A DNA stretch of 64,000 bases from positions 28,086,001 through 28,150,000 of the forward strand of contig NC_087249.1 in the NCBI RefSeq assembly GCF_037042905.1, written 5' to 3'. The translations under genes were made by a program, and so were the position numbers. The notes below the pieces were generated by a model, which searched no databases, was not told the origin of the DNA, and saw only the letters and a list, made by a program, of their open reading frames with translations. Of the stretch, positions 13,985 to 41,500 are shown piece after piece (the first letter of the stretch is position 1; every line of letters starts with the position of its first letter). Source of the DNA: Lytechinus pictus. Its lineage: Eukaryota.

Positions 13985-14945
13985 AACAAGTGGAATGCCT
14001 CTGGCCGTCTCACCTGCATCACGCGATTCAATATAGCAGCAGTGCTGATTTTGAAAACTACTATAACTCGCACAAGATGTTCAGTGATACTTGGTTACTC
14101 TTATTTCCACGTTTTATGAACTAGACCAATACACTTATAGAGATATGATGGCAATTCAACAAATACCCCCAACGTGGCCAAAGTTCTTTGACCTTACATG
14201 ACCTTTGACCTTGATCATGTGACCTGAAACTCGCACAGGATGTTCAGTGATACTTGATTACTATTATGTCCAAGTTTTATGAACTAGACCAACACACTTT
14301 CAAATTTATGGCTGTAATTCAACAAATACCCCAATTTGGCCAAAGTTCATTGACCCTAAATGACCTTTGACCTTGATCATGTGACCTGAAACTTGCACAG
14401 GATGTTCAGTAATACTTGATTACTATTATGTCCAAGTTTCATGAATCAGATCCATAAACTTTCAAAGTTATGATGGTAATTCAACAGATACCCCCAATTC
14501 GGCCAAAGTTCATTGACCCTAAATGACCTTTGACCTTGGTCATGTGACGTGAAACTCATGCAGGATGATCAGTGATACTTGATTAACCTTATGTATAAGT
14601 TTCATGAACTAGGTCCATATATTTTCTAAGTTATGATGACATTTCAAAAACTTAACCTTAGGTTAAGATTTTGATGTTGATTCCCCCAACATGGTCTAAG
14701 TTCATTGACCCTAAATGACCTTTGACCTTGGTCATGTGACATGAAACTCAGGCAGGATGTTCAGTAATACTTGATTAACCTTATGGCCAAGTTTCATGAA
14801 CTAGGTCCATATACTTTCTAAGTTATGCTGTTATTTCAAAAACTTAACCTCAGGTTAAGATTTGGTGTTGACGCCGCCGCCGCCGCCGCCGTCGTCGGAA
14901 AAGCGGCGCCTATAGTCTCACTCTGCTATGCAGGTGAGACAAAAA
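13985..14945 (-). mobile_element. DINE-1/HINE (Helentron-associated)-like non-autonomous element with internal tandem repeats of about 120-180 bp
   Basis: Subterminal inverted repeat gtctcacctgcat (14007-14019) / atgcaggtgagac (14928-14940), an adjacent partial IR, a (gcc)n microsatellite and a tgacctttgacc repeat array; A-run ends; sister copy at 42831-43696. Confidence 0.7.
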
Positions 14946-15923
14946 CTACATGTAAGTCATCCTTTAAAGTCTAAAATACCCTGTGTTTGACAAATGCATT
15001 AGTAATCATTTTTTAGTCTAATAAATCATGATGTTCAGTCAATTTAAAGAAGGGTAGCGTAGAGAAAAGTGCAGCATTCTCAGATGGCAAGAAAAACAAC
15101 ATACAATCCAATATATACACTTAACCCCTTTTCTCTGTGTCTCTATATGAACAAGCAAATCTGACGACACACACACAGTAGCAGCAGCAGAAGAAAACTA
15201 CTTTGCGTAATACATGAACAGATAAGCTGTTTAGTCAGAGTTCATATTGAAAACATGTAAAGTCATCACTTTTATACATTATATATTTAAAATATATACA
15301 AGAGGTATATGCATGAGTTGATACTTTGTATATAGATTATTTTACATCACCCCAACTCAAGAAAGACATCATCTGTAGGCAATACTATGTATGCTTGTTA
15401 TCTAGCCTACTTATATCTTAGGCTGTGTCTTGTTGACAAAGTTTGAGGGATCTGTGAAAAATATTTCAATACAAGATATTCTCATTCCTTACAGAGGTAC
15501 TCCTTAACATGATGATCAGTTTGATGTTTTCTTTAAAAACAATCAAGTCCACCTTGGTGTCCTGTCAATGAGCAATACCATATACATTTACCCGATATAT
15601 CAATTCTCTCTACAAGAAAACATAACAAATTACCTCTAATTTAAGGTCACCTACCAAGCTGCCAACCTTAATCGTGAAAATAATCCATTCTTTATTTCTT
15701 TTTATCCTATCTTCAAGCCTAAAATCTTATTTTTCTTTAAAATTTTGAAAAAACATACCAAATATCATCATTCTTACAAGTTTCAAAAATTCTATTTTTA
15801 GGGATAAAATCCTATTTAGTGTCACTTTCCTCTTGAAAATTCAACTATACAAGATAAAATCCAACTACTTGGCAGCTCTGCACCTACCAATGCTGGCTTC
15901 TCAGAAGCGCTTACTGGGCAGGC

Positions 15924-16093
15924 GGGTGTTTCATAAAGCTGTTCGTAAGTTAAGAGCGACTTTAAGAACGACTGGTGATCCTTTCTTGTTGTAAATGATA
16001 CACACCATTGGCGATGATTTAGCGCGCAAGAAAGGATCACCAGTCGTTCTTAAAGTCGCTCTTAACTTACGAACAGCTTTATGAAACGGCCCC
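15924..16093. mobile_element. Near-perfect palindromic MITE (arms of about 57 bp)
   Basis: gtttcataaagctgttcgtaagttaagagcgactttaagaacgactggtgatcc and its exact reverse complement; degenerate relatives at about 20059-20226, 35455-35610 and 42439-46673. Confidence 0.85.
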
Positions 16094-17165
16094 CAGGTTT
16101 AACAGCATGTGTTTCATGTATTGCATTTTTAGTTATCTAGCACACAGATAGCACATGGTTCTGAAACTAAAGTGTTCCAGTCATACTGTTAGGAATCAAC
16201 ATTGTTGATTGATACGGCACTATGTACAACAATAAAGCTAGTCTTGAGTTATGAAATCATTTCAAGATAAACTTGTTTAAATGGTTCTTAATTTCTGGGA
16301 AGGTTAATTACACTATCATAATGCAAGGAAAACATATTTACATACTCGGCATAACCCTGTAGATGATCACAATCAATGAAAAGAACATTTCACATCTGCA
16401 CATAATGAAACCACATGTCCATGTGCACACGCATAAGCTCTTTCCAAATGTTGCAAATCATCATGCTGAAAGTTATTATTACTGAAATAATTTACTATCT
16501 ATACATTACCAATTTGAACATTCATTGTAAGGACAATATGGTTTAAAAAGGGGTTTTAGTCCCAATCCACATACAGAACTCCTTTAGTACTCAAAATTAC
16601 TTCAGATAATTCATCTATGATTGGCCAAAATTGTACATCAAAGGAATGCTATTTTTACAAAAATTATTCCACTTTTAAAAAAATCTTTCTACTTGCTTTG
16701 TATTTGAAGTGAAAGTTCCCTTACCTTATGTATTCAATGACCTTAATTCATCCCAAGTGGGCTCAATATACCTCTAATATCATTTTGGAAACATTGTTCC
16801 TTTCAACATCATACTTCACAGAATCATGCAGTAAACATCACATGAATCCATGCATGTATTCATACCGTTTTTTTGTGAAACGAAAGCTACATTCACACAG
16901 AAGTATGACAATCTTATTTCATATAAATTCTGAAATCTACAGAAAATAAAGGAATTAGAATTACACCCCTTTGAACTCTGGAATAAGTTATCTTTCCCAT
17001 CAGGAACCCTGTAACACAAAGCCTAGCAATGATCATAGAAGACATTTTAAAGAAATAATAGCATTGACCACAATGTGTGATCAATCTTAAAATCAAGGAT
17101 ACGATCAATAACAAAGCTTTGTCTTACAGGCCCAGATGACTCTTTCCTACCTCAGACAGAGACAT

Positions 17166-17523
17166 CTAAAACTGTGAGAATCCCGGGGGTGGACGAATGC
17201 CCCCTTTGGGTTTGTAGCCAGATCCATGGAATTCTTTAGCGTGGACATTGAGGCGACTACCCTTACTCCCACCACCACCACCACCAGGGGATCCTTTCCT
17301 ACCACGGGAGGAGTCTCTACCGCCACCGTAGGGCACCGGGGACACCCTATCAGGGTTGGAAGAGGGTTTGAAGGCTTGAGGACCGGTCTGAAAGGCTGGA
17401 CTGGAATGAGCCATGGGGTTGAAGCTGTTCCCATCCTGAGTAGACCAAGGGATTTGGGAGTTGCCGTTAGCGCCCCTCTGATGATGGCGACTGTCGGGGA
17501 CCATGGGGCTCATTGGCGGGGTC
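17166..17523 (-). CDS. YTHDC2: YTHDC2 last coding exon, low-complexity tail with PAM2-like and PPPGF motifs
   Basis: Acceptor ttcccctggacag; phase 2 places it in the frame of ORF 17166-17513, ending …[30 protein letters not shown]. Confidence 0.82.
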
Positions 17524-20500
17524 CTGTCCAGGGGAAGTGGAAAAGAAATAGAACTATATTAGAAAATAATGAAGAGAGATTTCTATCCTGTGAGGCTCTG
17601 CATATGAAGGAGGTCAGATATTATGTACAAATAAGAAAACACTGCAATGCCAGTACATACAGCTACAGGAATTTGGTAGAAAACCTGGAACAAATATGTC
17701 CGTAAACGAAATAATAAACAATATATCCTACATAAATCAGATCCTGATGTACATGACCAACCATATTCTAGCTATGCTGTTGAAACAAAACGCCCATGAA
17801 GAAAATGTGCTATTCCGTGACGTCAATGATAGAATAGTGCACCATTATTCCATCATGGATGTCCCAGATCATGCAATCGCTACGTTCTACTTTCAATTTG
17901 TAATAAAACACTAAACAACGGACCTATCATTGTTTTCATCATTATGACATTGGTGTATAAATAATTATAAGTTCACTAAAAATCACATATCGTTATTTCC
18001 ACTGTTTGTTTGTTATCACTTTCATTTCCAGGGAGAGGGTCAAGTAGAGCATAGAATCTAATAATTCTACCGGATATATTTGTGGATGTATTACCTCTGT
18101 GAGTTATTCCACCTGCCAGCTGGACCACCCCTTGATGTGGGAGACTGTCTCCAGGCTCCCCCTTGACCTTGGTTCTGACCCCTGTAACCACCATTGGTCT
18201 GCTGGTAGGAGGGGCTTGATGGGGGTGGGGGTCGACCACTGCCACCACCACCACCTCTACCACCGTATGCACCTGATTATACAAGATTGAGTAGCATGGA
18301 GGGGGGGGGGGTGTATAGGGTAAAATAAAGAGAAGGGAAGTGAAAGAAAAAAAAATATGGGGAGAAATGGCAGACATTGGGTTTAACTTTAAATTATCTG
18401 TTCAGCCACTGAAGAGAGTTGTTTATAGCAGAGAGTTGAGCTGATTTGGCCTCAGATTGTGACAACACATATTATCTTTTTGTGTGTGCTTTTCAGCGAA
18501 TGCAGTATTCACCATACTATGTTTAAAATGAGCTGGGCTAGCCACATTCTCTAAATTAGAGGCTCTGGTTTGTCTAAGAGCCATCTATTTCAGAAAGTGA
18601 AGTCAATAAGGTCCTACTTTGTCAAAAAATACACAAATTTTCTGTTCTTCCTACGAATAAGTATGCAACATAAAGTGTCAAACTTGATTTATCGACAACT
18701 CTGGTTTGACTTCAGAGCTCTGTATTGAGTGCTTATCCAACTTATTTTTAATATGTAACAACATGTAGCTGACGATTTGTTCAGACCCAGGGCTTGCCCT
18801 GCATAGCAGTATCTGTCACATTAACCTGAATTTGAACTAAATTGACTATACTCTTCAGAAGAATGGCTTTGAAGAATATAATTAGTTTAGTTTGAACTTA
18901 CCTCCCTGTCTCTGATCATTCCCTCTCCAGTTTCCTCTTCCCTTCCCTTGCTGCTGAGAGAAAGAAATAAGTCTCATTACAATCTATATTCATCCATCAT
19001 TTACAATATTCCATGTTTGATTCACACAGGTGATTAACTAAATGCTACAAGAAATACATTCAAATTGAACTTCCATTTATTTTCATTATTTTTTAACCAA
19101 AACAAAAATATTATAGGAGTAATTCCATGAAATAATCATCCCATTTTTTTCCATTGAAAAACTTTAGATAAAAAAATAAATTAATCTAAATTTTCAAACC
19201 TGAATTCAAACTTTAAAATTTTGTTATGTTAAAATAAGTGTATAATTCAATATTCTCATTTATACATCAGTCCATGGGACAAGCTTTACCTGTGAATTTG
19301 CAAAGCGATTTGACAAACTGCCACTAGGAGGGCTGTTGAATTGTTCTATTGCTGTAAGAAAGGAGATTAAAAAATGAGTCACTTTACAAATCATGGCAAT
19401 TCCATATGAGAGATATAATACTGTTATCAACGTTTACATGCCTGTTGACATCTTGCCTTCCATCTTTACAATTCAATAACATGAAATATGCTACCAACTA
19501 TACTGTACTAACATTCAGGATATTAATCAATACTATTAATCCTTTTTCAAAGGAAAACTGTCAAATAAAGTCAAACATGCATTATACCAATACTGACTTC
19601 ATTAGAACTGTACAATTTTGGTTTGTAAAAGCTCATGTGATGTTACCTTTGTATATAACAATGAATATGCACTTTTACAAGTATATCAGAGGACCAATCA
19701 ACATTAAGGCTATTCACAATTTTATTCCTTTCATTATATTAAGTCTTTAACTGATGAAAGGAATATAAAAATGCATAAACTCCATAATTTTGTTCATATT
19801 GATACATATGTGCTTATTACTTTGCATGGGATGATAATAATATTACAGTGTATACAAATTTTAAGTCCAAGTGGGAGGATATTAAAGGAAAATAAGACAA
19901 TAGTGGAAAACACAGTTTAATTATGACACTGAATGGACTAAATTATAGGGATTTATTTTTAAGTACAAATGAGTAAATAATTCTGTGCACTGTCCAACTG
20001 TAACTACCTCAATGACATGTTGAAGAATTCCAATTCATAAATGAGCTGCTGCTTCCAGGTGGGTGTTTACAACATAAAGTTATGAGCAACTTTCCAAACG
20101 ACGGGTGACCTTTCATTGGTAACTAAATCCACATAAAAAAAAAAGGGTGTTTTATTAACCGCGAGAGGATCACCAGTTGTTCATAAAGTTGCTCGTAAGT
20201 TACAAACAGCTTTCTGAAACACCCACCAGGAATAGATGAATTCCCTAATTTAATAGGTACATACCCATTGGTTTAGGTCTCTGGCCAACTCCTACTGGCT
20301 GTTGTAGACCTAGAGATTGTTCTTCATTGGTCAGTACTTTAATCAATGTCTTCAGCACAGCCTGTAAAGATTATTTCATACAAAGATATTGTTTATTAAT
20401 AATAATATTCCGCATTTATATAGCGCTTAATACATCGGAACAACCTCTCTAAGCGCTTTACAGACATATTATTACCCCGGTCATCGGATCCTTGCATGCC

Positions 20501-23500: not shown

Positions 23501-26500
23501 ATCATTATCACTAGAGCCACTACCAATCACCCTATTGACCACCACCTTCTTTTGTCACTATTAAGATCACTAATACTAACATGCCAACATTTATATAGTG
23601 CTTAATACGATGTTTCTAACTGCTGCATACTATTATTCCGGCTATAGCAAGGCCACCCTGATCAGGTGCTCGAGCATTCAAGGAATTTCTTCCTACCGGG
23701 TACCCATTTACTACACCTGGGAGGAGAGTGGCAAAAGTAGATAAATGCCTTGCCAAAGGACGTGAGTGCCGCGGTGAGATTTGAACCCAGACCTTGTGGT
23801 TCATAGTCTGGGGACTTATCCACTGAGCCACAACACCTCTACAACAGTAATCCTCATTGCCTAATCCTCAATATCTTTAATCATGCAACTTATAAATCCA
23901 CTCTGCAGAGTGCTCAAGGCACTCATTGTTGTAAGTACTTTGGTTATAGCCCATCCACCATTCCAACACACAGGTAAATCAAGGAATTCCTGGCAGTTAC
24001 CTATTGTAGTTCAGAGATACTATCATCATAAATGTCAAATGAAGATTGTTTCTATAACAAACTATCAGATATGAAAGCCTGAGAAATCATTATTTCACTC
24101 ATCAGTACACTGTTGACAAAGAACTGTAAAGATAAGCGTCCACATCATTGTTTCCAAGAGGATTTATCATGTTTAAAGAATTAAACCGATGGAATTCCAT
24201 TGTCACGATCGATCACAATGCTAAGTGAAACAGGGCCCCCAATATGACTTACTTGGTGGTGAGTTGTCTGCGTTCTCTATCTACTTTGAGGATGTTAGGA
24301 TACATGCCAGCACATAGAGATGCCTTGACCACAGCCCAGTTCTCTGAGTTGGTGTTGAGATCACGGATGTCTCCTGGTCCCCTTGCCCTGACAAAGCCAG
24401 ACGCTCTCAGCTGGCCTAACAGCTGGGTTCTAAACAAGGATAAAATATTTAAAGGGATGGTCGGGCTGAAAGTATGTATAGCTAAATAGATAGAATAGAA
24501 TTCACTGAGCAAAATGCTGAAAATTTCATAAAAATTGGACAACAAATAACAAAGTTATTGAATTTTAAAGTTTAGCAATATTTTGTGAAAACAGTCATCA
24601 TGAATATTCATTAGGTGGGCTGATGATGTCACATCTCCACTTGTTCTTTTGTATTTTATTATATGAAAATAGGTTTATTCAAATTTTTTCCTCCAAGAAC
24701 TAGAAAAATTTGATTGTCAACTGATTTAGTGCATTAGATATTTATTGCTGCAACTTATTTCATTATAAGGGAGACATATTATTCACACAAGTATGAAATA
24801 ATGAAAAAAATATGATTTTATGTAATAACATAATAAAACGGAAAGTGGAGATGTGACATCATCAGCCCACCTAATGAATATTCATGACGACTGTTTTCAC
24901 AAAATATTGCTAAACTTTAAACTCCAATAACTTTATTATTTGTTATCCGATTTTGATGAAATTTTCGGCATTTTGCTCAGTGAATTCTACTCTATGTATT
25001 AAGATACAAATATTTTCAGCCCGGACCATCCCTTTAAAACAATGCAATAACCAAATACAATATTCTGAACCTATTTTAGACACAATTCACATAACCACGA
25101 AGCTATAAGCAAGAATACAGTGCTACTTTATTCGCGATGTAGATTGCAATTGACAAAATAAATGACATGTACTACAAGGTATTTGAAGAACAGATTAAAA
25201 GTGAATTGTGACAAAGAACACTGTGTGGCCAGCAAATAGCATTCCACCAAAATACATACATATATATATATTTCTCTACATCTATGTTTAAGGTGATTTT
25301 TTTGGTCTTCTTTCATTGTTCGTAATGCGCCTTAACGCCCTCTACCTTCGTCTTTATGTGTATTATGACAGAATAAACCCATTCATTGACTTCACCCTTT
25401 CGTAGGATGTAGGCATATATATATATATATATATATTCATGAAGGAAAACAAATATATTTATTCACCCTTCAAGTGCATCTTTCTTTTCATTTTCTCATT
25501 TTCTTAAGTACAGAGACATGCAATTCATAAAATTGTTGATTATTATTTGAATAGACTTCCTCTAATGAGTTTAAACTTCATCTGATCTTTCAAAATAGAT
25601 GTTCAAATGACACAATACTCATTATCATACCTCATTCCAACAATCATCTCCATGGTTGCTCTTGATAAAAAGTTTCTATCACAGAATGTACCTTCCCATC
25701 CATCACTACGAGCTCGCTGCCATGACTGGTACAGATATTCAAATACAAAATCAGACATGATTGAGTGAATGCAGAATTCTAATCATATAATAACATGTGA
25801 TGGAACATTACTATTTCATTTTCAATACGATTTCCATTTGGCAAAAGGTAATATTATTGATATTAACGACTGTACAATTTTTGTCAAACAACAGAATCTG
25901 GCTGTTAAAAACATTAAAATGCATCGACTAACATCTATTCTAATTTAAGTAGAAATATGGTGAAAAGGGCAAGTGCTGATCCTGGTTTTGGAAAATTTAA
26001 GTATGTCAGTGCTGCATATAATTGAAATGTGAATTTACTTGTAACAACACCTCTCCCTGGGAAACAGTGTATGTTACTGATGAAGCTATCCTGTATGAAT
26101 AAGTTTTAATAATAATAATAACAAGGTCATAAGGAACAGCAACTCCAGATAACAAAGGATTTTGGTTTTGTTATTGAGATCTCAGTAGGCGGTGCTGCAC
26201 CATCCCGAGTTTGCTCAATCTCGAGATTTTAGCCCGATCAGCCCTCTTCGCGATTAATCTCGAGATTCATGAAACCCCGTCTGCACCATCCCACGAGGAG
26301 CTATATCTGCTCGAGCGAGGCAACAAGCCCGATATTCCGGGCATGCGCACTTTCGGATCTTGGAGTTTCAACGGCCCGCGCTTTTGAATAACTTCCCGCG
26401 ATATGCAAGCAATGAACTCCTTTCATTAGTACTTTCGCCGAATTCAACCGGTGTTATGCAACAATCCTTTCAGCTCAGCGAGTGAAGAAGTGATGTATTC

Positions 26501-29500
26501 TTCGTGAAATATGATGGCGGAGTAGGAGGCAACGACAGAGAGAGAGAGAGAGAGGGAGAAGGAGGAAAGAAATGCTATTTGCTCACATTTTGCGAAGGAA
26601 TAAGACAACACTGCTGTCAGTGTTGTTATTGAATATGACCATCGTCGATGCGATGAGCGCCTCCCCCTTCGGTCTGGTCTCTCCCGGGGTCTCTCCCAAA
26701 ATCCATTCACTGGTGGGGACACCATCGTTGCTTATGAACGCTATTCGCATGTATAAAGTTGACTTTCGCACGTGTTTATGTTTTGACCAAGGCGGAAGTG
26801 GAACGCGAATTGCATTATGGACTGACGTCATGAATAAATTACCCCGAGTCCAATCTCGAGTGCGTCTGCACCGACGAATTAGCGGGATAATTCGTAAAAT
26901 AGCGCGCTATTTTGCAAATAAACCCGAGTTGACTTGGGATTGCAATCTCGAGATTAATCCTACGAACTAGCGCGATAATTGCGTCTGCACCGCCAACTAT
27001 CTCGAGATTTTTCAGATCGGGATAATTTGCCGGATCAGAAATAGCGCGCTAATTTGAAACTTCGGGATGGTGCAGACGGCCCTAGTGAGAGTGCTTATAA
27101 GCATGACTTGGAGGAAATAAAATACTTTACTAAATGAAGTCACATAGATTGGTGCCTTGATGACTTCTACTGACCTGGAATGCCCTAAGCAAGGCCATGT
27201 GATCACTGAAAGTGTTGGAAGAATATTTCTTGCGGATTTGCATGGCACCACGTTTCTGAGAAGGGTGGCTGGGAAGCACAACTGTGAATAGAGGTGACAT
27301 GAAAAAGTTAGGTTACACAATGAAGTTGTAATGCCTAGAAGAGCGACTAAATCTGATGAGTACTGCTCAACTGTCTCTTCAATAAGTATTGAACAAATAA
27401 GAGATTGATAATTACACTAGTCATACTGAAACCACATACTATAAAACTTCTATCACTTCTATCTTGAAAATAACAGACATGGCACAGATAACAATAACTC
27501 AGATTTATCAACCAGTTATGTATCATTATCATGTATTTACGTATGCCCAAAGGTTGATTCTCAAAACATTGATGGGGCGCACAGCACATCCCTAGCACCC
27601 GTGCCTACATTCGCCACTCGATATAATGCATGAATCTAAGATTTAGCAACAGGTCATGTATTTTTGTAATAACATTGGGGGGGGGAGGCATGCATGCCTT
27701 GCACCCCTGCTTGCATCCACCACTGGATATAATGCATGAATCTAAGATTTAGCAACAGGTCATATATTTTTGTAATAACATGGGGGGAGGCATGCATCCC
27801 TTGCACCCCTGCTTGCATCCACCACTGGATATAATGCATGAATCTAAGATTTAGCAACAGGTTATGTATTTTTGTAATAACATGGGGGGGGAGGCATGCA
27901 TCCCCTGCACCCCTGCTTGCATCCGCCACTGGATACAATGCATGAATCTAAGATTTAGCAACAGGTCATGTATTTTTTGTAATAACATGGGGGGGAGGCA
28001 TGCATCCCTTGCACCCCTGCTTGCATTCGCCACTGGATATAATGCATGAATCTAAGATTTAGCAACAAGTGATGTATTTTTGTAATAACATGGGGGGGGG
28101 GAGGCATGCATCCCTTGCATCCCTGCTTGCATCCGCCACTGGATATAATGCATGAATCTAAGATTTAGCAACATGTCATGTATTTTTGTAATAACATGGG
28201 GGGGAGGCATGCATCCCTTGCACCCCTGCTTGCATCCGCCACTGGATATAATGCATGAATCTAAGATTTAGCAACAGGTCGTGTATTTTTGTAATAACAT
28301 GGGGGGGAGGCATGCATCCCTTGCACCCCTGCTTGCATCCGCCACTGGATATAATGCATGAATCTAAGATTTAGCAACAAGTCATGTATTTTTGTAGTAT
28401 CATGGGGGGGGGGGGAGGCATGCATCCCTTGCACCCCTGCTTGCATCCACCACTGGATATAATGCATGAATTATTCTTACATGGGTCTTTGTAGGCAAGA
28501 GCACACACGATGGTAAGGACTGGATCAAGGCACTTCAAGACAATGGCATAGAGGACCATTTTACCGAGCCTTGGGTCTACTGGCAGGTCTGCTAGGTGAC
28601 AACCAAGCTCCGTCAGGTCCTCCCATTTATCCATAGCATCAATAGACTGTCGACAAAAAATATGGAGGAAACCTTTTGAAACTTGTTAGATCAACATTCA
28701 ACACAGATACTGTAACAGGCATCTAATAAAGTACAAATTGATGTGTCAAACACTGTATGAAATAATCTAATTGTAAATTCTATTTATAAAAGCTTAATAA
28801 GTTTCATATTAGTTTATGTATCCATGTGTAAAATATGAGTGTCTGTAAACACCTTACATCATTAGTAAACTTTTGAGGAGGCCAACGACACATTCCTCAT
28901 GATGTAAAGAGGTCAGTGAGCTCCCAGTAATTCACAATGATGCTTGCTAACTGCACATTTACATAAAATATGTACATCTGACCCCCTACATGTAATACCT
29001 TCCTGAAATGATTCGTGCTTATTCAAAGTTAGAATGTTTTCTACTTCCGAATACAAAGTAATGAAAGCTACAATACTATCAAATTATCATCACTGGTTCA
29101 GTTCATGAAGTGAAATGGGAATGGAGACAGAAGGTATTGGATGTATAAAACAGTTTTAAGGAATTGTGCAATGTACATTTTGTGCAATGTTAGAGAAAAT
29201 AACTTGTTATCATGAATGAATAAATGGTTACTAATAGTTGGAAACCGAAGATATTAGAAGTACCTTGAGTAGATTGACGGCATTCCTGATAGCTACAGTA
29301 GCAGGTGGTTCAGGAGCTCTCTTCAAGAAGTCACCTACTGATGTTTCGTTAGGGGCAAGAAGTTTGGTGTGAAGACACAATTCCTAGAAAGGATAATAAT
29401 TACGTATCAGGTTTTGATATTTTTGCCCATCAGATTCAGTTTCATATTACAGTGATCATTTCACTTCCATCGTTCTTGTTCCCAGAGGAAAGCATGATTC

Positions 29501-32500
29501 AAAAGTTTAGAGATGACAATTTACACAGACAGATAGATACTAAGAAGGGAATGCACAATATGGTTTAAATATTAAATCTTATTGAGATATTTTGCAATTT
29601 ATGTATCAATTCTAGTAAAGAGGAATAAATATAAAATCAACAAAGTTTAAGAGTGACAGCCATATCATGTTCAAACCTTTCCCTAACATGACAAAAAAAA
29701 GTCTCAATTTTCCTATCAATATTCATATCATCAATGACATATGAATTTTGGATACTGCAAAAAGAAGGGATTTTTTTTATAGAAACATGGTAAAAACAAA
29801 GAGAATTTGTTTTCTTACATGTAATGGTGTTCTGAGGATTTCAGGAACCTGGAAGTCAGGTAGACTCTGGTAGCGAACTCTACTAATCAGATGAAAACAC
29901 ATTCCTGGACGAACACGACCAGCTCTGCAAAATATAAACACAAACAAAGTATGATATCAATTCATATTTCTGGAACCCTCAATGGGTGAGTTCAAGTACG
30001 GTGTTGAAATCGGGTGTTGTGACAACACCAACACCAGCCACAACACTGTACTTGAAATCAGGCTGGTGTTGGGATTAACCTCGAAAAATATGACGTATTT
30101 CTGGCAGTTCGTGTTGAAGACTGGTGTTGAATGTTGTCTGCTGTCTGTTGTCACATCACTGACATCGTATCCAGAGCAAGTAAAAAACTGTACATGATTC
30201 GTAGTCTGAAAAAGTTCAACCTCTCTAGAAAAGACCTGCTAACTATCTTTACATGCTATCTACGACCCATACTAGAGTACTGTGCACCTGTGTGGCACTC
30301 GTCCATAACAGCCAATGAATCAAAACAAATAGAATCTATCCAGAAAAGAGCATTGCGTATAATTTTTGGCAAAGATTATTACTCATATGATAATGCACTT
30401 TCAACTTCTGGCCTTACAACCTTGTATGACAGACGTGTCACTTTGTGTATGAAATTTGCACTGTCCCTTGAAAAGTTCTTTCCTCATTGGCTATCCCCCA
30501 AACAATCCGAATTTAGAGCCCTCCGAAATAGTGAGAAATATAGACTGACGAAGTGCCGCACAGAACGATACAAGAAAAGTACCATGCCCTATCTAATCAG
30601 GCTTTTAAATGATAGATGAGTCTTTTAAATGATAGATGAGTAACACATATGTTTCCATGAAGTTTAAATGTGCTATGTATTTCCCCAAATGAATTGATCT
30701 TATAATGTATTAATTACCCTTTTTATATCCATGTTGAATATTATCAATTTGCTATGTATGTTCAAGTAATTATATATTCTTTTATATTGCAAACACCAGA
30801 TGAATGAAACAGTGGCCAATCTTACAAATTATGCCTTTATCCTATTTTGAAACAATACCTCATTTATTTTGAAACTTAAATAATAATTTGCTGAAAGATG
30901 TTTTTTTAACCCCCCCCCCTCCCGTTCCATATATCTTTATCTCCATTATGTTGAACCTTTTCGATTTTTTGTTCAGCAGGACCATTTTTTCTTCTTTACG
31001 TTCTACTTGTAAATGCTCCATCAATTATATGTACATGTATATTTTTCTGTAACTCCTGCCAGTAGGCCTACTCGTAATTACATGTAGCATCACTTCTAAT
31101 ATCCGCTTCCTTACACACACACTCAACTTATCATTTCTCTTATTTTGGAATCATTATTGTTCATTATAATTTTTACGGTATATCGAAATTAGTATTGTAA
31201 TTTTTGTAAATTAGAATCATTATTATTGTAGCCTTGAATCATCACTGTATATTTGAATTGTTATGGTTAAATTGAATTAAGATTATTATTGTAATTGAGA
31301 TTTTATTCATGTCTATGTGCAATTTATATGTTTTTATTGTAAATTCAACGGCAATTCAGCCTTCGTGGCTGCTAAATTAGCTTTTACAGTTACGATGAGT
31401 ACAATTCATTTGAGCTTTATATATTTCGATGAAGAATAATGTTTATTCTTTCGAATTCTTGAATTAATTAAAGCATTTGTATTCTGTGCTATGAGAATAT
31501 AATGCATTTCTCTCTGATTTCATTTTTTTCGTCGAGCCTTCTTGCGTGAAGTTGAGATGATTTAGCAGCACAGCGCAGAGGCGTGACGTCAGGTGCTATC
31601 GATAACGCAATCGATATCGTTCCTCTGAACCTAACTCGGTTCAGCGGCCTTTTAACGCTCTCAACACCAACACCGAACTTGAAATCACCCAATGACATCG
31701 CAAATATTTCTAATAAAAAATTTAACCAAAGACTCAGGTCCTTTTTTTACTATTTACCCCTGTGTTAAAGTCTGTGGTTGAATTGTGCTAATCTCAGTAT
31801 TTCATTTTTACCAGATATTTAATCTTTATGGTAAACAGTTTTAAGCAACAAAAACAGTGTTTATTTCACAGTATCACTGTTCAACCATCTACATCAATAG
31901 TATGGTTTAGGTGTGTACATGAATTGACCAAATAAGTATATCAAATAAAAATAGTTATTGATCATAAGGTATGAAATAACACAGGACAATAATCAGAACA
32001 CAAGTACTGAATTAAATTACACACCATCATCTTAATAGTTTGATATTAATACATACCTTCCTCTTCTCTGCTTGGCACTTGCTTTGGATATCCAGTTGCT
32101 CTTCAGTGATGAGATGTTGGCTATTGCATCAAATGATTTCTATAATAATAATAATAATAATAGCTGGATTTATAAAGCGCTTTTTGCCAGAGGATACAAA
32201 GCGCTGCTATCATTACCCCGGCTTTAGTTCGAGCTACCATCACCGGCGCTCAGTGCATGCAAGGAATTAATCCTGCTGGGTACCCATTCACCTCACCTGG
32301 GTCGAGTGCAGCACAGTGTGGATAAATTTCTTGCTGAAGGAAAACACGCCATGGCTAGGATTTGAACCCACGACCCTCTGTTTGAAAGGCGAGAGTCAGA
32401 ACCACTAGACCACGACGCGCCCACAATTTAAGATAAACATTGTTTATTTTAACATGTCACTCTGTATTATCATTGGAATACATGGTCTAAAACTTTGCCC

Positions 32501-35500
32501 AGATTTGTCTTATGAAGCAAAGATGAAAATTATATATATATATCTACTTCAAAATGTGCTAATTATAACAACCCTTGACAATCAATAATGTAATAATTCA
32601 AAATGAAAACATGCAAACTATCTATCAAGGACAGGATAAGGAACAGTAGTTTCTAACGTCAAATTACACAAATTTAAGACCATTTTCATGTAACACTTTC
32701 ACAATTTCTGACTTCTCACCTCTTGAAAAGCTATTGGATTTCTATCCTAATTGCTCTCCCCATCCTTCAGGACTTATTCAATGAAATGTTTTGATAAGTT
32801 TGATACTAAGAAACCATGTTTACTTGACTAGCTAAGGGCAAAATTGTTATTAATAACAAACAGTATGAAACACGACCCCGATCGCTTTTTTATTTCAAGA
32901 TTACGGAGTGGAAAATCGAGATTGATACATTTGCCAAAGGATAGTAATGCCAGGTACGTAGTGATGTCATACCTACCTCCTTGACTTTTCCAGAGTCTAT
33001 AACAAAGACTACATCGTTGATAGTTACACTGGTTTCTGCTATATTTGTTGAAAGCACCTGTAAACAGCAAAATAAATGGAAACAAATATTCCTTTCAAAC
33101 AATCCTTAACATCAAATAACTGTTAAACTTGAACATGTGAGAGGACACCTGAATGGGAGAATGAGGTAATTACTATATTTCTAGTGCTGATTGAGTTCTT
33201 TAAATTTTTGCAGGGCAATACAGATAACAAAATGAATGGAAACAAATATTCCTTTCAAACATTTCTTAAAGTCAAATAACAATTAAACTTGAACATGTGA
33301 GAGGACACCTGAATGGGAGAATGAGGTAATTACTATATTTCTAGTGCTGATTGAGTTCTTTAAATTTTTGCAGGGCGATACAGATAACAAAATGAATGGA
33401 AACAAATATTCCTTTCAAACAATTCTTAAAGTCAAATAACAATTAAACTTGAACATGTGAGAGGACACCTGAATGGGAGAATGAGGAAATTACTATATTT
33501 CTAGAGCTGAATGTGTTTAAAGTTTTACAGGGTGATACAGATAACATATGGGAGGGTAAACATTCTCTACATTATGGCTGAGTTTTACCTTAAGTACATG
33601 ACTCTTCACATATTCATTCATATTGAAGTTAACACACTCATATCTTTTTGTATAAAGTCATAATTACGAATAAAGCAAAATTTGTCCTCTTAGATTGAGA
33701 TGACAATAACAACACAAAATGTGAAGTATATTTAGCAATGCGGTCATGGGGGTGGTATGGCTGTTATGGTTGTCATTCTTACAATCTTTCTAATGTTCTG
33801 GCCTGGTGTCTTGAAGACCTTCTTTTGATCATGACTCTGCATGCTGGAATGAAGTGTGTAGATCTGATAGGACTGACGATCACTGAAGGTATCATCCTGG
33901 AGCAACATGTCACGGAGGGTAACAATGTCATCATAACCAGGTAGGAAGACAAGTATGGCACCTCAGAGAAAGAAAAGAAATTAAGAATCATATGAAAGTA
34001 GCTTCTAATTGTCTAATATATTTGCAGTAAATGGCACAGTAATGAAAGGTATTATACTGTAAACCTTGACCTTCCATAATTTTAAGTGTTAAAAAAAAAG
34101 CAAATAAATGTGGTACTTACGTCTTCTTAGGCAAATATAAAGTCAAACAGATTTCTGTGGACCCAAGAGATTTAACTGTATTCACTTCCAGTTTTTTTCA
34201 ATGGGGTAGCCTCCTTTGATGACATTCTGCATGAGGGCCCTAATGTCTACTGAACACTTTTAAATAGAGCCACTGTACAATATAGACTACTTAACAAATA
34301 ACATTGTAAACATTGTCCTTTTTTAAAATGAAATGGTAAACAACCATGTAAGTTTTACAATTTATCAATCACAATCATAAGCTTTATCATCATGGTATCA
34401 TCACCCCTCCCCCTCCATTATAATCATTTACACACATTATTCTAAAAAAAATACCTTCTTGTGAGTTGCTGCATATGTAGTCAAGGAGAGCAAGGATCAG
34501 ATTGAGGTCAACCCTTTCATCATCAAAGCTGTGATGATAAGCTTGAAGGAGCTCTCTGTCTTCAGCACTAACTTCACTGTGATTCCTCAATAACTCACTC
34601 TCATCCTCATTGGTAGCTTGGACCGTGTCCCTGTGGGGGCAAGATTCAGAAGGAATTTGATGTCAGACCAGACAGACCTAGAATGCATAACAACTTGCTT
34701 AAATACCATACGGCAGTTCCATTAAATAATCAGCCTGTTTAAATACAAGGTCTGCACCTTTCTCTATATTTACTTCACTTCACTGGCGGCTCAAGTTATG
34801 ATAATTTCAAAGAATAAGAACTTGACTAAGGTCCCACCTATAATGGGCAAGATGAAATAACTTTGTGGAATTGCCAAAAGGTCAGTTTTTTAAGAGGTTC
34901 TAATGCACATCTTATACATGCCAAATATATACCCTGGAAACCTAATAAACCCACAGCAATACTATGGATCTTCATAAACCTTTTCACTTAGATATCTTTG
35001 GAAATATTTCTACTAATTGAAAATGGTCAGCTGGTTTGCTGAACTTACAGATATGCTTGCAGAAGTTCCAATACTTCTGTTTGGTTGAACATCCTTGCAA
35101 AATCCAAAGCTGACCTGTAAACAAAAGTAAAACATTTTTTACAGTAAATCTGAAATTTAAGGAATGTTTTTTAATATAAGCTGTAACACACCTATGACCG
35201 ATAACATGGTAAAGAAAGGCAAAGAATACGATGTTTCTCAGAGAACTAACTGAAACCTACAATTCAATAATGAAGAATTACTTACAATCATTAACCTACA
35301 TGCATGTCCATCCCCACTTTTTCCCCTTATTACTTCACTCCACAAACTGTTCAAGTCCTGATAACCTGAGTGTTACAACTTAACATATAAACTTGATGTG
35401 AATATCCATATCAGATATTGAGACAGAGTTGCCTGAAATAAATAAAGTGTGCTGTCTCATAAGACTGTTCGTACAGTAACACATGACTTAACACACAACT

Positions 35501-38500
35501 GGAACATGTTCTTCGGAGCTCAGCTCAGGCAGCTACATAGGGATATTCAGCACAAGAAAGGGTCAACAGTCACGCATAAAGTCAGGCGGAACTTATAAAC
35601 AGTTTTGTGAGCTCGTCCTGTGGTCTTTATTTACCTTTCATCGGATGCTTTGAGAGAAGCGTTTGCACCAAGGCTAAGAAGCTGTTCAACCATCTCTACA
35701 TTGCCTCGCCCTGCTGCAACCATCAGTGGAGTCACACTAGACTCTGAATGTGCATAGTCAACTGTGTTCATTTCAGAGGAAAAAAAAGGAAAAGGACCAT
35801 AACGCACAGTCACAATACCAATTTGGCTTCAAAGTTTTGCGGAGGATGATGTACTCCTCAGATGCTTCACGTTATAGAAAAGCTGAACAATGACGTGAAA
35901 GTGAAATAGATTAACTTTGTTAAAAGCTTCAATTAATATACATTCTAAATTCAAAAGAACCATTGTCTTTAAGAGAATGTTTGTATATTTTCCATGCCTA
36001 CAGGCTTGCAATCTAGATGAAGAAGTCCTTGGCTGGGAATGATTCAAGTGATAACTGAAATGAAAAACTAATGTCTAGTATGGGAAAACTAATAACTACG
36101 CCACTCACCACTGACATTCTCATTGAGGAGAAGGTAGAGGAGTTGAGAGAAGTAATCATCATCACCTGTCTTCCAACAGTCTGAGAGGGCGCTATCCATA
36201 TCATGGATGAGCCACTCTGCCATGTCCTCAACATCAATAGATGTCTGTGAGAATAAACAAGATTTTTCATTTAACTTTTGAGCATTATGTCTGTGTCAAA
36301 TCGTGTGTTTATAAAAATAAACAAGACATAACTGATTTATCAAGAAACATCTGGCATGCTTTAGGATAGCCAACTTGAATAAAAGAAAGCAGAATCTAAT
36401 TCAAGGTAATATCAAAAGATCAATTGTAAAATTTAATTTCAAAACAAAGAGTACACTATCACAATTTGTCCCCATCCTTCATATAAATCTATTTTCACTT
36501 TTACATGAAATTAGTAATTAATGAATAATTTAATCAGTAATTGATCATCATTATTGTAACATTCATTCATATACCAATAATATTCCTACAACACCATTTC
36601 AAATCATTGTAATTTTATGTTTATTCTGTTGATTTTTTAATGTATGTTTGTTACTGTGTTTAATCATTTGAAAATGAAAATAAATCCAACTGACATTAAA
36701 CTGGAATAAGATGATCCTACTTTGCTGGACTCAAGGACATTTTCTTTCAAAATTCTATTTAATCATCTTTTCATATTAACCGTCTGCTTGCTGAACCAAA
36801 AGCAAGGCACCATATGGATGGTGATGAACTATATTCTTACATCAGCTGCAGATGGTCCCATAGTTGTAGCTCGGAAGTCTCTTGATAACGAGTCTACTGA
36901 TGGGTGCACAGGAGCCACTGAATGGCCCTTGCTTGCTGAGGCTCCGCCTACCTGGTCAGTATTGTACCATTTGTTGAGCTGTTGTTGTTGCTTGGCAACT
37001 GATGGATAGCAAGTGGAAAGAATCTTACTTTACCAAAGGATGGTATATTAAAACAATATCTAATCACAAAACTGAATTTATAAAGATACAAACTGATGAC
37101 AAACATTTACATATTTATTGTAAATAATGGTACATGGAACATATGCAAGTTTCTAGGAAAGAAAACTAATGTGAAGATAAAAAAAACTCAAAATAATCAA
37201 AAAACGTAAATTTTTTCAATTTTCCTGATTATGACCAGCATGAAATACGATTGCAGGGATTATTCCAGTCAGTATATTTAAGAAAACCTCTTGAAATCCA
37301 AATAGAAACCACATACATATTAAAGAAGTATTCCTTTTCTTATGCATACATGATAAAAATTCTTCAGTTCTTTCAGTCCTACCATGATACCATTACCTTT
37401 TCCTTTCTCCTTCTGATATTCAATCATCTTTGCATTTGTGTACCGTGTGCTGAATAAATGAAAAAGAAAGTTTTAACATAATATAAAAAGAAGCATGATT
37501 TAGGATATATTTTTCCCTGTAGTAGAATCATATTCAGGTCAAATTATAATTGTTTAGTACCAGTCCTAATTACCATCACACATTTCTTAATTACGACACA
37601 AAATTATTCATTATAATTACTTCATGTCTCATAAATGCTAGTTCAAGTTGTGGTAACAAACAAAAAATGAGTTTGATATAATGAAATGACCATTAAAGAA
37701 TTTGTGTATAAATAAAAAGAAATAAGTGCCAAATGATTCCAGTAGGAAATGTGAAATTGCTGAGTGATTAACCAAACCATTATGGCATTCCAGTTTGGTG
37801 GGGTTTTCCCCCAAGCAATAATATTACACATGTGCGTGCCTGTGTTGCTGATCTTCAGAGTGGTCATTTTTCAGTCAAGATTTCATGACTTCAAAAAGTT
37901 CAGTTCATGTAAAGATCTAGGCCGAGGCTGAAATAATGACAATTAGCCTCGGTTGATATCAAAATCTCTCTCATGAAATCATTGCTACTGTTGACAATAC
38001 AGTTCAGTAGTCTAACTTTTAACCTTTACTGCCTCATTGTGACTTACCACTTCAGGGCATCTTCAAGAAATAGCTCTTCAACATCAAACATATTTCCTGG
38101 AACTAGAAGACAATGGAAAGAAACAAATTCAATTAAGCATTCATTTCTCCAGATAACATATCATATTTCTCTTCTATCTTTGCTGAACATCACATAGCAG
38201 TAGCATAGCAATTTACACATATACAAAACATACAAACGGTGGGGAATGTTTGTGTTTACATACATAAATATCGGTTGCTGGCATCAAACAAGGGTTTTCA
38301 TTTCTTTTTACCAGAGGACAATTTTCCTTCCCTATCAGCAATATGTCTCTCTCACTCTTCATGGTTCTGAATATAATCAAGAATGCAGCTCACATTTACA
38401 CAATAAAAAAAGTCATTGAGACCGCACTGCACAGTTACCACCTACAAGGTTTGAATCAATATCAATTATCATCAAAACAATAATGAACGGATGAGAACCG

Positions 38501-41500
38501 AGCAAAATGTAAGAAAACAGATTCACCTACCAGAGACAATGGGGCAGTTATTGAAGTAGCGTACAAAGAGTTGAACGTCAAGGGCAGCACTCATGAGAAC
38601 AAGTGTGAGATGTCTTTTCCTTGTCATGAGGTCTCTGATCTGAGTCACAAGGAAATCACTAAATCTATCCCTCTCATGAATTTCATCCTGGTTTGGAAGA
38701 TAACAAAAGGAAAAACACTAAATAGTTGAACAAGTCATCACGGATTTGTAAATTATAGCAGCACAACACAACACAATATAATTAACATAAATTAAAATGA
38801 TTTTAAATTCGAAATCTAGAAAGCTTTGAATATGCGTAAAACAATATAAATGGTAAAATGTTTCCTGTTAAATATAAGTTAAACGATCATCTTAAAAGAT
38901 ATTTCATGCATACTGCATATTTCATTAACACAAATGACAAAGCTTTCCACTCATATGTGACCACGTAACATGTTGCAAGAGGTGGAGAGGAGGGGTTTTT
39001 TGCATCTCAACTGAATAGGAGTTTGATGGACACTTACAATAATAACATGAGTGATTACATCAAGGGCTGCATCTCCTGTCATTAGGGTTCGTAGTAGAAC
39101 ACCGTTGGTGCAATAAGTAAGCAGGGTCTTCGGTGAAACTCTGCAAGTGAAAAGACATAGAATTATCTGAAGGTAGATAAGAATTACAAGTGTATTTCAC
39201 AGCACTTTGAGCAGTCGTAGATTGATAAAGTGCTATAATGTATAAAATTGGAAATTGGAAATTATTATTATTATATCAATCTGTATTGAAATTTTAATCA
39301 AACTACTGTTTCATAAATCCAAAATCAGCAACATGTTCATGAATGAATAATTTCTTTTCAAAAAGGAGAAAACTCCACCCTTATTCTCCATGCCCCTTTA
39401 AGGATGGTAATCACATACAAGCTCTAATGGCAAGTGCTGAAGATTCTTGTGGTCAAAGTAATGTGTAAGGCTAAGTCGTAAAAATGGGTATTGACTTAAT
39501 AATGGTGGTAAAGGTTTTAGAATAGGTGTAGATACAGAAGTAGGAGCAACAGATTTAACCCTAAAAGAGCCGGATTATTGGGACCCCTCTCACAGGGGGG
39601 GGGGGGGGGTGGTGGATTACGCCCCCCCCCCTGAGATTTCGGCCTTCGATTGCACGAGCGCCGCAAAAATTTGCAGTGGTATTGTGCGACACCACACCAC
39701 ACGGCTGTATGGTTAATTTTTTGAAATAAGATTTTTCATTTAATGAATTATTTATGCTAATTTATGTATGAAATAAAACATTTGCTCTAATCAACTATAA
39801 TACGGCCCCAAAACTGCTAATTTTTTATTCTCAGACTCTTTGTAGAATACCGATCAAAAAATTTGGAATCACAATTTTTCTGATGTATATTTTATTTCTT
39901 ATGAATTTCTTTGTTTTTTTACTTTGTTTTTTATTGGTTTTTTCAATAGGAATTGCTGCAGACTTAATTCTGATCATAAACAAGACAAAATTAATTAAGT
40001 TTAATCAGTAAAAGTAGAAATAATGATACATTTATGAATTTTGGCTAAGTACACAATTTGCATTGGATTAAATGAATTTGTACATAAATTCACGTTTTTG
40101 AGCAGTTTTGGGTTTGACATGCACCTAATGTTGCGTAATTTCGTAACCGCAGACCTGGGCATCGCAAATTTGGTCTCAAAAGTTGTGCAAGATTTGAAAG
40201 TAAAAAGCTCCCCGGGCCTTTTAGGGTTAAGGTAGAGCACTTCTTACAAAATCAGATATTGACTAAAAATATAGGGTCTGTCCTTGACATCCGATGTAAC
40301 TGCATACCTTTCTATTTCTACTTTTCTGTTGCCAATATTTGAAATGCATACCTGCTTTCTAGTCTAATTTGATAACCAACTGTCTGACCTATTGCCTCTC
40401 CTCTTTCAGCTGCAACCCTCTCAGATACTGAAAGGGCTGATATCCGTCTAGGCTGGGTACAGATGATGCGACATGGCCTTTTCATTTCAAAGCATTCATC
40501 CAATATGAATTGAGGAAGCTGTTCAAATGAAGGAATATTTTACTGTTATATGAATAACGGGATAACGTAGTATTTATATTACGCAATTGTCTATTTGTCT
40601 ATTCAAAGGCACACAATATATAATCACAACTTAAGCTCCAGGTGCTCTTTCAAGAGCTGAGTGCATTCAAGAAATCAATCCTGCCAGATAGCCATTCACC
40701 CAACCTGGGTTGAGTGCAGCACAATATGGACACTTTTCTTGCTGTAGGAAAACACTGCATGGTTGGGACTCAAACCCATGACCTTCTGATTGAAAGATGA
40801 GAGTCAAACCACCTGATCATGATTTCACTTCTTATATTAATGTTAGGGTCAACTAGTGGCGTTTTAAGCAGTGAAACTGTCCATGGGGGAGGGGATGATC
40901 TATAGAGTTCCCCTCCCCGTCAAATAGTGAACACACAAAAATTTCTGCCAGTGTAAGGTCATAGGCCTTATCAATCGGCTGATTTTCACATGAAATATTT
41001 CCCCCTCCAACATCAAAAAGTGGAATAATTGAATAACAAGATTTTTTTAAAGATGTACCTGAGTTGTCTTTCCAGATCCAGTATCACCAACAACTAGGAC
41101 TACTCTGTTATTATTGATGGTTGCAAGTATTTCATTCCTCATAGCATAAACTGGCAGCGTCTGACGAAAGCTATCAAGATCTGACCGATTTCTCTTGGAG
41201 GGCACCTGAGGAAGACTGCTGTTGAGACGTCCAGTCGCTTTGTTCATCTCACGGGCTGGGTTTACTGTTAATCATATACATGGGAAAGATTTAGCTGTAA
41301 CTCTATTTTGAATCAGCTTTTCAGAGCATGTTTTTACTGGGTGGTTGATGACTCCCTTGTCAAATCTTGGCTTTAAAATGTCCAACCTCAGACATTCGCA
41401 CAAATCTTTATATGAAACATGGAGGCATAGTTTTTTTTTATCATTTTTTGTTTTTTTGATAATCAAATGGTTTGGTAATCAATACTTTAAAAAATCATGC

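What the first reader, a model, noticed from the sequence alone, without database searches (positions are those of the whole stretch)
17166..20361. YTHDC2 orthologue with no YTH (m6A-reader) domain; an RGG/SP low-complexity tail takes its place
Seen in sequence: similarity to vertebrate YTHDC2 ends at [15 protein letters not shown] (exon 27). Four further phase-consistent exons (19290-19351, 18902-18953, 18095-18272, 17166-17523) encode about 215 aa rich in G/R/S/P/Q/N and then TAG. I found no YTH-like peptide (vertebrate RYFIMKS...GIWST...FQG...EWI) between there and CEP120. Established: vertebrate YTHDC2 ends in a YTH domain, the Drosophila relative Bgcn lacks it, and m6A binding by mouse YTHDC2 is reported dispensable for fertility. 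Inference: this lineage keeps an intact helicase (GKT, DEIH, SAA, QRRGRAGR) but replaced m6A reading with a disordered interaction or condensate tail.
Basis: partly seen in the sequence, partly recalled or inferred. Interest (0 to 1): 0.8.

Follow-up and report, generated by a model that had tools for sequence, protein, structure and literature searches.

The report
YTHDC2 helicase gene without YTH domain
This is a real, expressed YTHDC2-type RNA helicase gene that ends in a 215-residue disordered tail instead of the usual m6A-reading YTH domain, but the loss of YTH in sea-urchin YTHDC2 was already reported in 2018, so the new parts are RNA-level confirmation and a PABP-binding-like motif in the tail.

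Summary
On the minus strand, RNA contigs and stranded RNA reads join 20265|19351, 19290|18950, 18902|18272 and 18095|17523. They then run unspliced through the TAG at 17166-17168 into a roughly 2 kb 3'UTR. One correction: transcripts use the second AG of a cagCAG tandem acceptor, so exon 29 is 18902-18950.

The tail is 215 aa, 71% G/R/S/P/Q/N, net charge +19, with no predicted structure. Pfam found no YTH in any of 243 stop-to-stop ORFs of 30 aa or more, on either strand, across 6974-20449. R3H, helicase motifs I, Ia, II, V and VI, an ankyrin insert, HA2 and OB are all present.

The finding is not new. Jain et al. 2018 list purple sea urchin YTHDC2 as "lacking YTH domain", with a caveat about annotation error. 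Here that caveat is removed for this gene.

The "replacement" reading is inference. The tail has no detectable relative. Its one specific feature is a PAM2-like motif, [12 protein letters not shown] (Pfam 18.4 bits, cutoff 20), followed by a terminal PPPGF. The same scan noted both motifs on this window as separate findings. Orthologue C-termini in other echinoderms could not be fetched.

The parts
20265..20361 (-). It encodes [32 protein letters not shown] plus one base, and is the last exon before the low-complexity tail.
   Evidence: AG acceptor and GT donor. Joint 19351->20265 is seen in X1 and X2 contigs and in 6 X22 reads. A 1377-nt X2 contig runs into this exon from upstream exons.
19290..19351 (-). 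Tail exon 28 (62 nt): [21 protein letters not shown]
   Evidence: Splice sites; joints on both sides.
18902..18950 (-). Tail exon 29 as used in transcripts (49 nt).
   Evidence: Joint 18950->19290 skips 339 with CT..AC ends, in X1 and X2 contigs and 6 X22 reads. The arithmetic of X2 contig 14 fits 49 nt.
18095..18272 (-). Tail exon 30 (178 nt): Gly/Arg/Pro/Gln-rich, with RGG, GGGGG and PPPP runs and two Trp.
   Evidence: Translation. Joint 17522->18094 (cut +1) is seen in X1, X2, X21 and X22. No Pfam family matches.
17166..17523 (-). Terminal coding exon part (118 codons plus TAG at 17166-17168). It is disordered and S/P/G-rich.
   Evidence: Open frame. X1 contig 7 is colinear across the stop. 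AF2 gives pLDDT 59, pTM 0.13 and no secondary structure. phmmer finds 0 hits in 1.84 billion representatives. Organism A RNA runs hold 97-100% of its words and organism B runs 32-47%.
17223..17258 (-). PAM2-like motif [12 protein letters not shown], a candidate ligand of the PABP MLLE domain.
   Evidence: Pfam PF07145 E=0.0016, 18.4 bits against a gathering score of 20. It was the only notable family hit among the 59 ORFs scanned. LN..A.EF occurs once in the 128,000-residue six-frame translation of the window. L3 and F10, the main MLLE determinants (PMC11565960), are both present; position 12 is G, not P.
17178..17192 (-). PPPGF, four residues from the C-terminus. It fits the PPG-hydrophobic GYF-domain ligand pattern.
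   Evidence: Regex match. By analogy, the PPGL of TNRC6 binds the GIGYF2 GYF domain (PMC5467174). In a Pro/Gly-rich tail this could be chance.
14950..17165 (-). 3'UTR; the end point is approximate.
   Evidence: Low, even coverage of minus-strand RNA only (first mate on +), and overlapping contigs of similar depth covering 14921-17522 apart from a high-depth repeat at about 15930-16065. The only AATAAA lies at 15696-15691.
24252..49608 (-). Upstream YTHDC2 exons used for family assignment: R3H (49411-49608), motif I (41050-41271), Ia (40321-40539), II and III (38526-38717), ankyrin (35634-35828), V (32893-33105), VI (about 32070 and 29780-29956), HA2 (28374-28685) and the OB start (24252-24554).
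   Evidence: ORF translations. Pfam: R3H 1.3e-5, Ank 4.3e-6, HA2_C 1.4e-10, OB_NTP_bind 2.1e-3.

Best explanation
This is a genuine, transcribed YTHDC2-family 3'-5' DExH RNA helicase gene that has lost its C-terminal YTH domain.

Shown:
- The mRNA runs from the OB-fold exons through four short exons and stops at TAG 17166-17168, followed by about 2 kb of 3'UTR.
- No YTH coding potential remains in the 13 kb around and downstream of it.
- The helicase motifs are intact.

Inferred:
- The protein engages its mRNA targets without m6A, through the helicase core, R3H, OB and partner proteins. This is what mouse genetics indicates for YTHDC2 in general.
- The 215-aa basic, disordered tail acts as a short-motif adaptor rather than a folded reader.
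- Its most likely specific contact is the MLLE domain of poly(A)-binding protein, through the PAM2-like [12 protein letters not shown].
- A GYF-domain protein may also bind the terminal PPPGF, and the RG dipeptides may add non-specific RNA affinity.
- That would hold the helicase on polyadenylated mRNPs and link it to repression or decay machinery.

The confidence given (0.65) is for the whole statement. I put about 0.9 on the YTH-less expressed gene and about 0.35-0.4 on the PABP-binding adaptor role of the tail.
For: Gene structure and expression: splice joints and colinear contigs in four RNA runs, with strandedness matching the minus strand.

Absence of YTH: Pfam scans of 243 ORFs on both strands, and the PDB search of the last exon.

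Family assignment: R3H, Ank, HA2 and OB Pfam hits plus motifs I, Ia, II, V and VI.

Disorder: composition and the AF2 model.

PAM2:
- Pfam E=0.0016.
- The core pattern is unique in the window.
- By the tail's own composition (2 Leu, 2 Glu in 215 aa) the pattern is expected about 2e-6 times (inference).
- The best Atlas feature hits are PAM2-bearing clusters, at 0.76, which is a lead only.

Hints of coding constraint:
- An in-frame 3-nt indel polymorphism at 17479.
- A second species label expresses the last exon at roughly 97% identity.

Literature:
- YTH loss in S. purpuratus YTHDC2.
- m6A binding is dispensable in mouse.
- PABPC1 is found in MEIOC and RBM46 pull-downs in mammals.
Against: - The PAM2 hit is below Pfam's gathering score, and position 12 is Gly.
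- PPPGF is not improbable in a Pro/Gly-rich sequence (roughly 0.06 expected).
- The tail has no detectable homologue among 1.84 billion representatives. Conservation is shown only for one closely related species label, which is too close to prove selection.
- No binding data exist.
- A YTH-bearing paralogue elsewhere in the genome was not excluded. The scan's notes mention only YTHDC1.
- In mouse, truncating the YTH domain destabilises the protein, so the domain may have a structural role that the tail would not obviously supply.
Confidence: 0.65

Rival explanations
1. The tail is a neutral leftover. After the YTH exons were lost, the reading frame ran into new short exons. These give a tolerated, functionless disordered extension, and the PAM2-like and PPPGF matches are chance.
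For: There are no homologues of the tail at all. The composition is low-complexity. PAM2 is below the Pfam cutoff. The AF2 model has no structure. YTH loss has happened repeatedly in animals without any known replacement.
Against: Four constitutively spliced exons keep a 215-codon frame open. The observed indel is in frame. LN..A.EF is very unlikely in a tail that has only 2 Leu and 2 Glu. The exon is expressed in a second species label.
Confidence: 0.25
2. The YTH domain is not lost. It sits on a rare alternative isoform with distal exons outside this window, or on a YTH-bearing YTHDC2 paralogue elsewhere in the genome, which would make this gene a derived duplicate.
For: Only about 6% of each deep run was read, and 51 joints were not listed. 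The genome could not be searched. Flies show that YTHDC2 duplicates can coexist.
Against: Contigs in two runs and stranded reads in two more show the tail path only, with colinear read-through of the stop. The next gene downstream is a convergent CEP120-like gene on the plus strand, leaving no room. Neither strand of 6974-20449 has a YTH hit. Jain et al. found only a YTH-less form in S. purpuratus. The scan's notes list no second YTHDC2.
Confidence: 0.06
3. It is an assembly or annotation artefact: the YTH exons were dropped or misplaced by the assembly.
For: Jain et al. raised this caveat themselves. The window holds an N run at 54658-54905.
Against: RNA contigs assembled independently of the genome give the same exon chain, stop codon and 3'UTR. 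The N run lies far upstream, not in the 3' region.
Confidence: 0.02

Closest known systems
Strongylocentrotus purpuratus YTHDC2 XP_011672995.1, listed as 'lacking YTH domain' (Jain et al. 2018, eLife 7:e30919, supplementary file 16)
   Same: An echinoderm-type YTHDC2 with the full helicase architecture and no YTH domain. It is probably the same gene or its orthologue.
   Different: The paper rests on an annotated protein and flags possible assembly or annotation error. It does not describe the tail. Here the 3' exon chain is confirmed by RNA and the tail is characterised. The organism of this window is coded, so identity with S. purpuratus was not established.
Vertebrate YTHDC2 (human Q9H6S0, mouse B2RR83)
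   Same: R3H, DExH core with an ankyrin-repeat insertion, HA2, OB, and intact motifs I, Ia, II, V and VI.
   Different: The vertebrate proteins end in a YTH domain that binds m6A weakly. This one ends in a 215-aa disordered tail.
YTH-less YTHDC2 homologues of Hymenoptera, mosquitoes and nematodes, and Drosophila Bgcn
   Same: Loss of YTH with retention of the ankyrin-containing helicase body.
   Different: Bgcn also lacks R3H and has dead ATPase motifs, whereas here the ATPase motifs and R3H are intact. These are independent losses in other phyla.
TNRC6/GW182 C-terminal effector domain
   Same: A disordered region that combines a PAM2 motif with a PPG-hydrophobic GYF ligand and scattered Trp residues. 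It works as an adaptor to PABP, GIGYF2 and deadenylases.
   Different: There is no sequence homology. This is a functional analogy only, and binding is untested here.

Membership tests
YTHDC2 family (DExH helicase) | N-terminal R3H domain | tested here: met
   Pfam R3H E=1.3e-5 on the exon fragment 49411-49608. The 25.6 bits fall just under the 26.8 cutoff because only half the domain lies in this exon.
YTHDC2 family (DExH helicase) | Intact DExH helicase motifs I, Ia, II, V and VI | tested here: met
   GSGKT, TQPRR, DEIH, TNIAETS and QRRGR|AGR are found in minus-strand exons.
YTHDC2 family (DExH helicase) | Ankyrin-repeat insertion between the two RecA lobes, which Jain et al. 2018 treat as diagnostic | tested here: met
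   Pfam Ank E=4.3e-6 at 35634-35828. This lies between the motif II/III exon (38.6 kb) and the motif V exon (33.0 kb).
YTHDC2 family (DExH helicase) | HA2 and OB-fold extensions | tested here: met
   HA2_C 1.4e-10 and HA2_N 8.4e-5. OB_NTP_bind is weak at 2.1e-3, on an exon fragment.
YTHDC2 family (DExH helicase) | C-terminal YTH domain | tested here: not met
   No PF04146 hit in 243 ORFs on both strands of 6974-20449. The transcript stops at 17166.
YTHDC2 family (DExH helicase) | Orthology by phylogeny | not tested
   No orthologue sequences could be fetched. The closest solved helicase by sequence is DHX36.
YTH-domain m6A readers | YTH fold with an aromatic cage | tested here: not met
   The gene should not be filed as an m6A reader.
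PAM2-containing PABP partners | PAM2 consensus xxLNxxAxEFxP, with Leu3 and Phe10 | tested here: inconclusive
   L3, N4, A7, E9 and F10 are present and P12 is G. Pfam gives 18.4 bits against a cutoff of 20.
PAM2-containing PABP partners | Binding to the MLLE domain of PABP | not testable with these tools
   Needs a pull-down or ITC.
GYF-domain ligands | PPG followed by a hydrophobic residue in a disordered region | tested here: met
   PPPGF at tail residues 207-211. This is a pattern match only; binding is untested.
RGG/RG-box proteins | Clustered RGG or RG repeats (di- or tri-RGG within a few residues; this definition is from my own knowledge) | tested here: inconclusive
   There are only 2 RGG, 42 residues apart. 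There is one close RG pair (RGNWRG) and 7 RG in all.

The most novel reading that the evidence does not exclude
In this lineage the YTH domain was functionally swapped for a TNRC6-like effector tail. The PAM2 motif docks the helicase on PABP-bound poly(A) tails, and the terminal PPPGF recruits a GIGYF/4EHP-type repressor. The protein would then read 'polyadenylated mRNP' rather than m6A, and would carry its own repression module.
Probability: 0.2. Interest if true: 0.55.

Novelty: already known. Interest (0 to 1): 0.3.

Why it matters
YTHDC2 is usually presented as an m6A reader, yet mouse genetics shows that its m6A pocket is dispensable for fertility. A deuterostome in which the YTH domain is absent from an otherwise intact, expressed helicase supports the view that YTH is a removable accessory.

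Jain et al. 2018 already drew that conclusion, with a caveat about annotation error. For this gene the caveat is now removed. The tail's PAM2-like motif gives a concrete, cheap hypothesis for what tethers the YTH-less protein to mRNA.

Tried and rejected
1. phmmer of the 118-aa last exon against 1.84 billion representatives gave zero hits. This spent the only job of that kind. A conserved OB-region exon would have been the better query for fetching orthologues.

2. Full-length orthologues could not be reached with the search for homologous proteins. Candidates must be 0.55-1.75 times the query length, and only single exons can be given by reference.

3. PDB searches found no PAM2 peptide chain, no YTH chain and no full-length YTHDC2.

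4. A YTH vestige was considered. Neither Pfam nor the PDB search supports it, so it was rejected as unsupported.

5. A separate downstream gene fused by read-through was considered. It was rejected because tail exons and upstream exons have similar contig depth and are joined in single contigs.

6. The first literature search was badly framed and returned nothing useful. Searches showed that only Jain 2018 bears on echinoderm YTHDC2.

7. The exact poly(A) site was not resolved, because a highly expressed tandem repeat abuts the end of the UTR.

Full report
**What is there.** The feature lies on the minus strand. The exons are 20265-20361, 19290-19351, 18902-18953, 18095-18272 and 17166-17523, with TAG at 17166-17168.

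**RNA evidence.** I laid two Logan contig sets and two stranded raw-read runs of the same organism label on 14600-20500.
- Joint 19351->20265 skips 913, 18950->19290 skips 339 and 17522->18094 skips 571. All have GT..AG ends on the minus strand.
- A 237-nt contig of run X2 decomposes as 101+2+49+62+23 nt. It therefore spans exons 30, 29, 28 and 27, including the 18902|18272 junction.
- The 339-nt skip shows that transcripts use the second AG of a cagCAG tandem acceptor.
- A 1172-nt contig of X1 is colinear from 16933 to 17522, so it reads through the stop codon unspliced.
- Low, even coverage with the first mate on the + strand only (that is, minus-strand RNA) continues to about 15.0-15.4 kb. 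Overlapping contigs of similar depth reach 14921. Together these indicate a 3'UTR of about 2 kb.
- A 1377-nt X2 contig enters exon 27 from upstream exons, so the tail belongs to the same mRNA as the helicase body.
- No listed joint leaves the last exon towards lower coordinates.

**Absence of YTH.**
- I translated every stop-to-stop ORF of 30 aa or more in 6974-20370 on the minus strand (119 ORFs) and in 7009-20449 on the plus strand (124 ORFs).
- Each was scanned against Pfam-A at E<=0.5 (alignments A1-A4). PF04146 never appears. The hits are scattered chance matches plus PAM2.
- phmmer of the last exon against all PDB chains, which include the human YTH domains, gave nothing YTH-like at E<=10.
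There is no room for further YTHDC2 exons.
- An exon shorter than about 30 codons, or a very degenerate one, would escape this scan. The RNA evidence makes that moot for the main transcript.

**Family assignment.** Minus-strand ORFs upstream carry the following:
- GSGKT (41050-41271) and TQPRR (40321-40539).
- DEIH and SAAL (38526-38717).
- An ankyrin repeat (35634-35828; Pfam Ank 4.3e-6).
- TNIAETS (32893-33105).
- QRRGR|AGR, split between about 32070 and 29926.
- HA2 (28374-28685; HA2_C 1.4e-10).
- The start of the OB fold (24252-24554; 2.1e-3).
- Half an R3H domain (49411-49608; 1.3e-5).

R3H plus a DExH core with an ankyrin insertion plus HA2 and OB is the YTHDC2 architecture, and Jain et al. 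treat the ankyrin insertion as diagnostic. Orthology by phylogeny was not tested. The closest solved helicase by sequence is DHX36.

**The tail.** With the observed splice it is 215 aa.
- Composition is G 21%, S 13.5%, P 12%, R 9%, Q 8% and N 7%, together 71%.
- Only 5.6% is I/L/V/M/C. Mean hydropathy is -1.3 and net charge is +19.
- It has 2 RGG, 7 RG and 6 GR, so it is RG-containing rather than a classic RGG box. It also has 4 Trp, 5 Tyr and 8 Phe.
- AlphaFold2 on the last exon alone gives pLDDT 59, pTM 0.13 and no secondary structure. A single-sequence run is weak evidence, but it agrees with the composition.
- phmmer of the last exon against 1.84 billion representative proteins found nothing at E<=0.001. 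The tail has no detectable relatives in that library.
- RNA runs of a second organism label hold 32-47% of the 31-mers of the last exon, against 97-100% for the window's own label. That corresponds to about 3% nucleotide divergence, so a close relative expresses the same exon.
- A 3-nt deletion at 17479 (one His fewer) is carried by most reads and by one contig set. It is an in-frame polymorphism.

**Short motifs.**
- The only Pfam family on the tail is PAM2 (PF07145; E=0.0016; 18.4 bits against a gathering score of 20), at [12 protein letters not shown], 17223-17258.
- Leu3 and Phe10, described as the main determinants of MLLE binding (PMC11565960), are present, as are Asn4, Ala7 and Glu9. 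Position 12 is Gly instead of Pro.
- The core LN..A.EF occurs once in the 128,000 residues of the window's six-frame translation.
- The tail holds only two Leu and two Glu. By its own composition the pattern is expected about 2e-6 times (my arithmetic).
- The best Atlas feature hits are clusters in which some members carry PAM2. The scores of 0.76 and below are leads only.
- The protein ends ...[13 protein letters not shown] fits the GYF-ligand pattern that, as PPGL, lets TNRC6 bind GIGYF2 (PMC5467174). In a Pro/Gly-rich sequence I expect this about 0.06 times by chance.
- The same scan had already filed both motifs on this window as separate findings.

**What is already known.**
- Jain et al. 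[quoted passage not shown] - Their supplementary file 16 lists S. purpuratus XP_011672995.1 as "lacking YTH domain". It holds no other echinoderm, hemichordate or amphioxus entry.
- Saito et al. 2022 (PMC8887132) show that m6A-pocket mutant mice are fertile. They also show that truncating the YTH domain destabilises the protein.
- No other paper in the library links YTHDC2 with sea urchins.
- The central claim of the finding is therefore published.

**Mechanism.**
- Shown: the gene is YTH-less, expressed and helicase-competent by sequence.
- Inferred: the protein acts on mRNAs independently of m6A, and the tail serves as a disordered adaptor.
- I put about 0.9 on the YTH-less gene being real, and about 0.35-0.4 on the PAM2-like motif binding PABP.
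- PABPC1 turns up in MEIOC and RBM46 pull-downs in mammalian cells. Contact with PABP would therefore fit the pathway, but that is indirect.
- The main rival is that the tail is a tolerated, functionless extension.

**Limits.**
- I could not fetch orthologue C-termini, date the loss, or search the rest of the genome for a YTH-bearing paralogue.
- The scan's own notes mention only a YTHDC1 with YTH on another piece of the genome, and no second YTHDC2.
- The organism is coded, so I cannot say whether this is S. purpuratus itself or a relative.

Noticed in passing
window:18950-18956 (minus strand): There is a tandem (NAGNAG-type) acceptor, cagCAG, at exon 29. The transcripts seen use the downstream AG. 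Use of the upstream AG would add one Gln.
   Followed up: partly
window:17479: An in-frame 3-nt deletion polymorphism (one His of HH) is carried by the X1 contig and by 3 of 4 and 6 of 7 reads in the two raw-read runs.
   Followed up: no
window:14065-14871: A tandem repeat with units of 163 and 192 nt abuts the end of the YTHDC2 3'UTR. Its RNA depth is about 2,500-2,800, against 3-5 for the gene, almost all from the minus strand. Many 'goes back' joints of 158-192 nt occur here. It is probably a dispersed, highly transcribed repeat family.
   Followed up: partly
window:27587-28471: A 103-nt minisatellite of 8.5 copies at 93% identity lies in the intron just downstream of the HA2 exon. It gives a run of repeated pseudo-ORFs on the minus strand.
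   Followed up: partly
window:45001-46399 (minus strand): Reverse-transcriptase-like ORFs of a non-LTR retrotransposon (for example ...[21 protein letters not shown]... and [11 protein letters not shown]) lie inside a YTHDC2 intron, split into four frames.
   Followed up: no
window:15782-16175, 17752-17948 and 20313-20500: These short stretches have RNA depth far above the gene's, on both strands for the first two. Reads begin in a pile at 20410. They are presumably repeats expressed elsewhere in the genome.
   Followed up: no
Its identity was not tested.
   Followed up: no
Neither Pfam nor the PDB search supports a YTH vestige, so I treat it as chance.
   Followed up: partly
window:54658-54905: A run of 248 N lies inside the 5' part of the gene region.
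   Followed up: no
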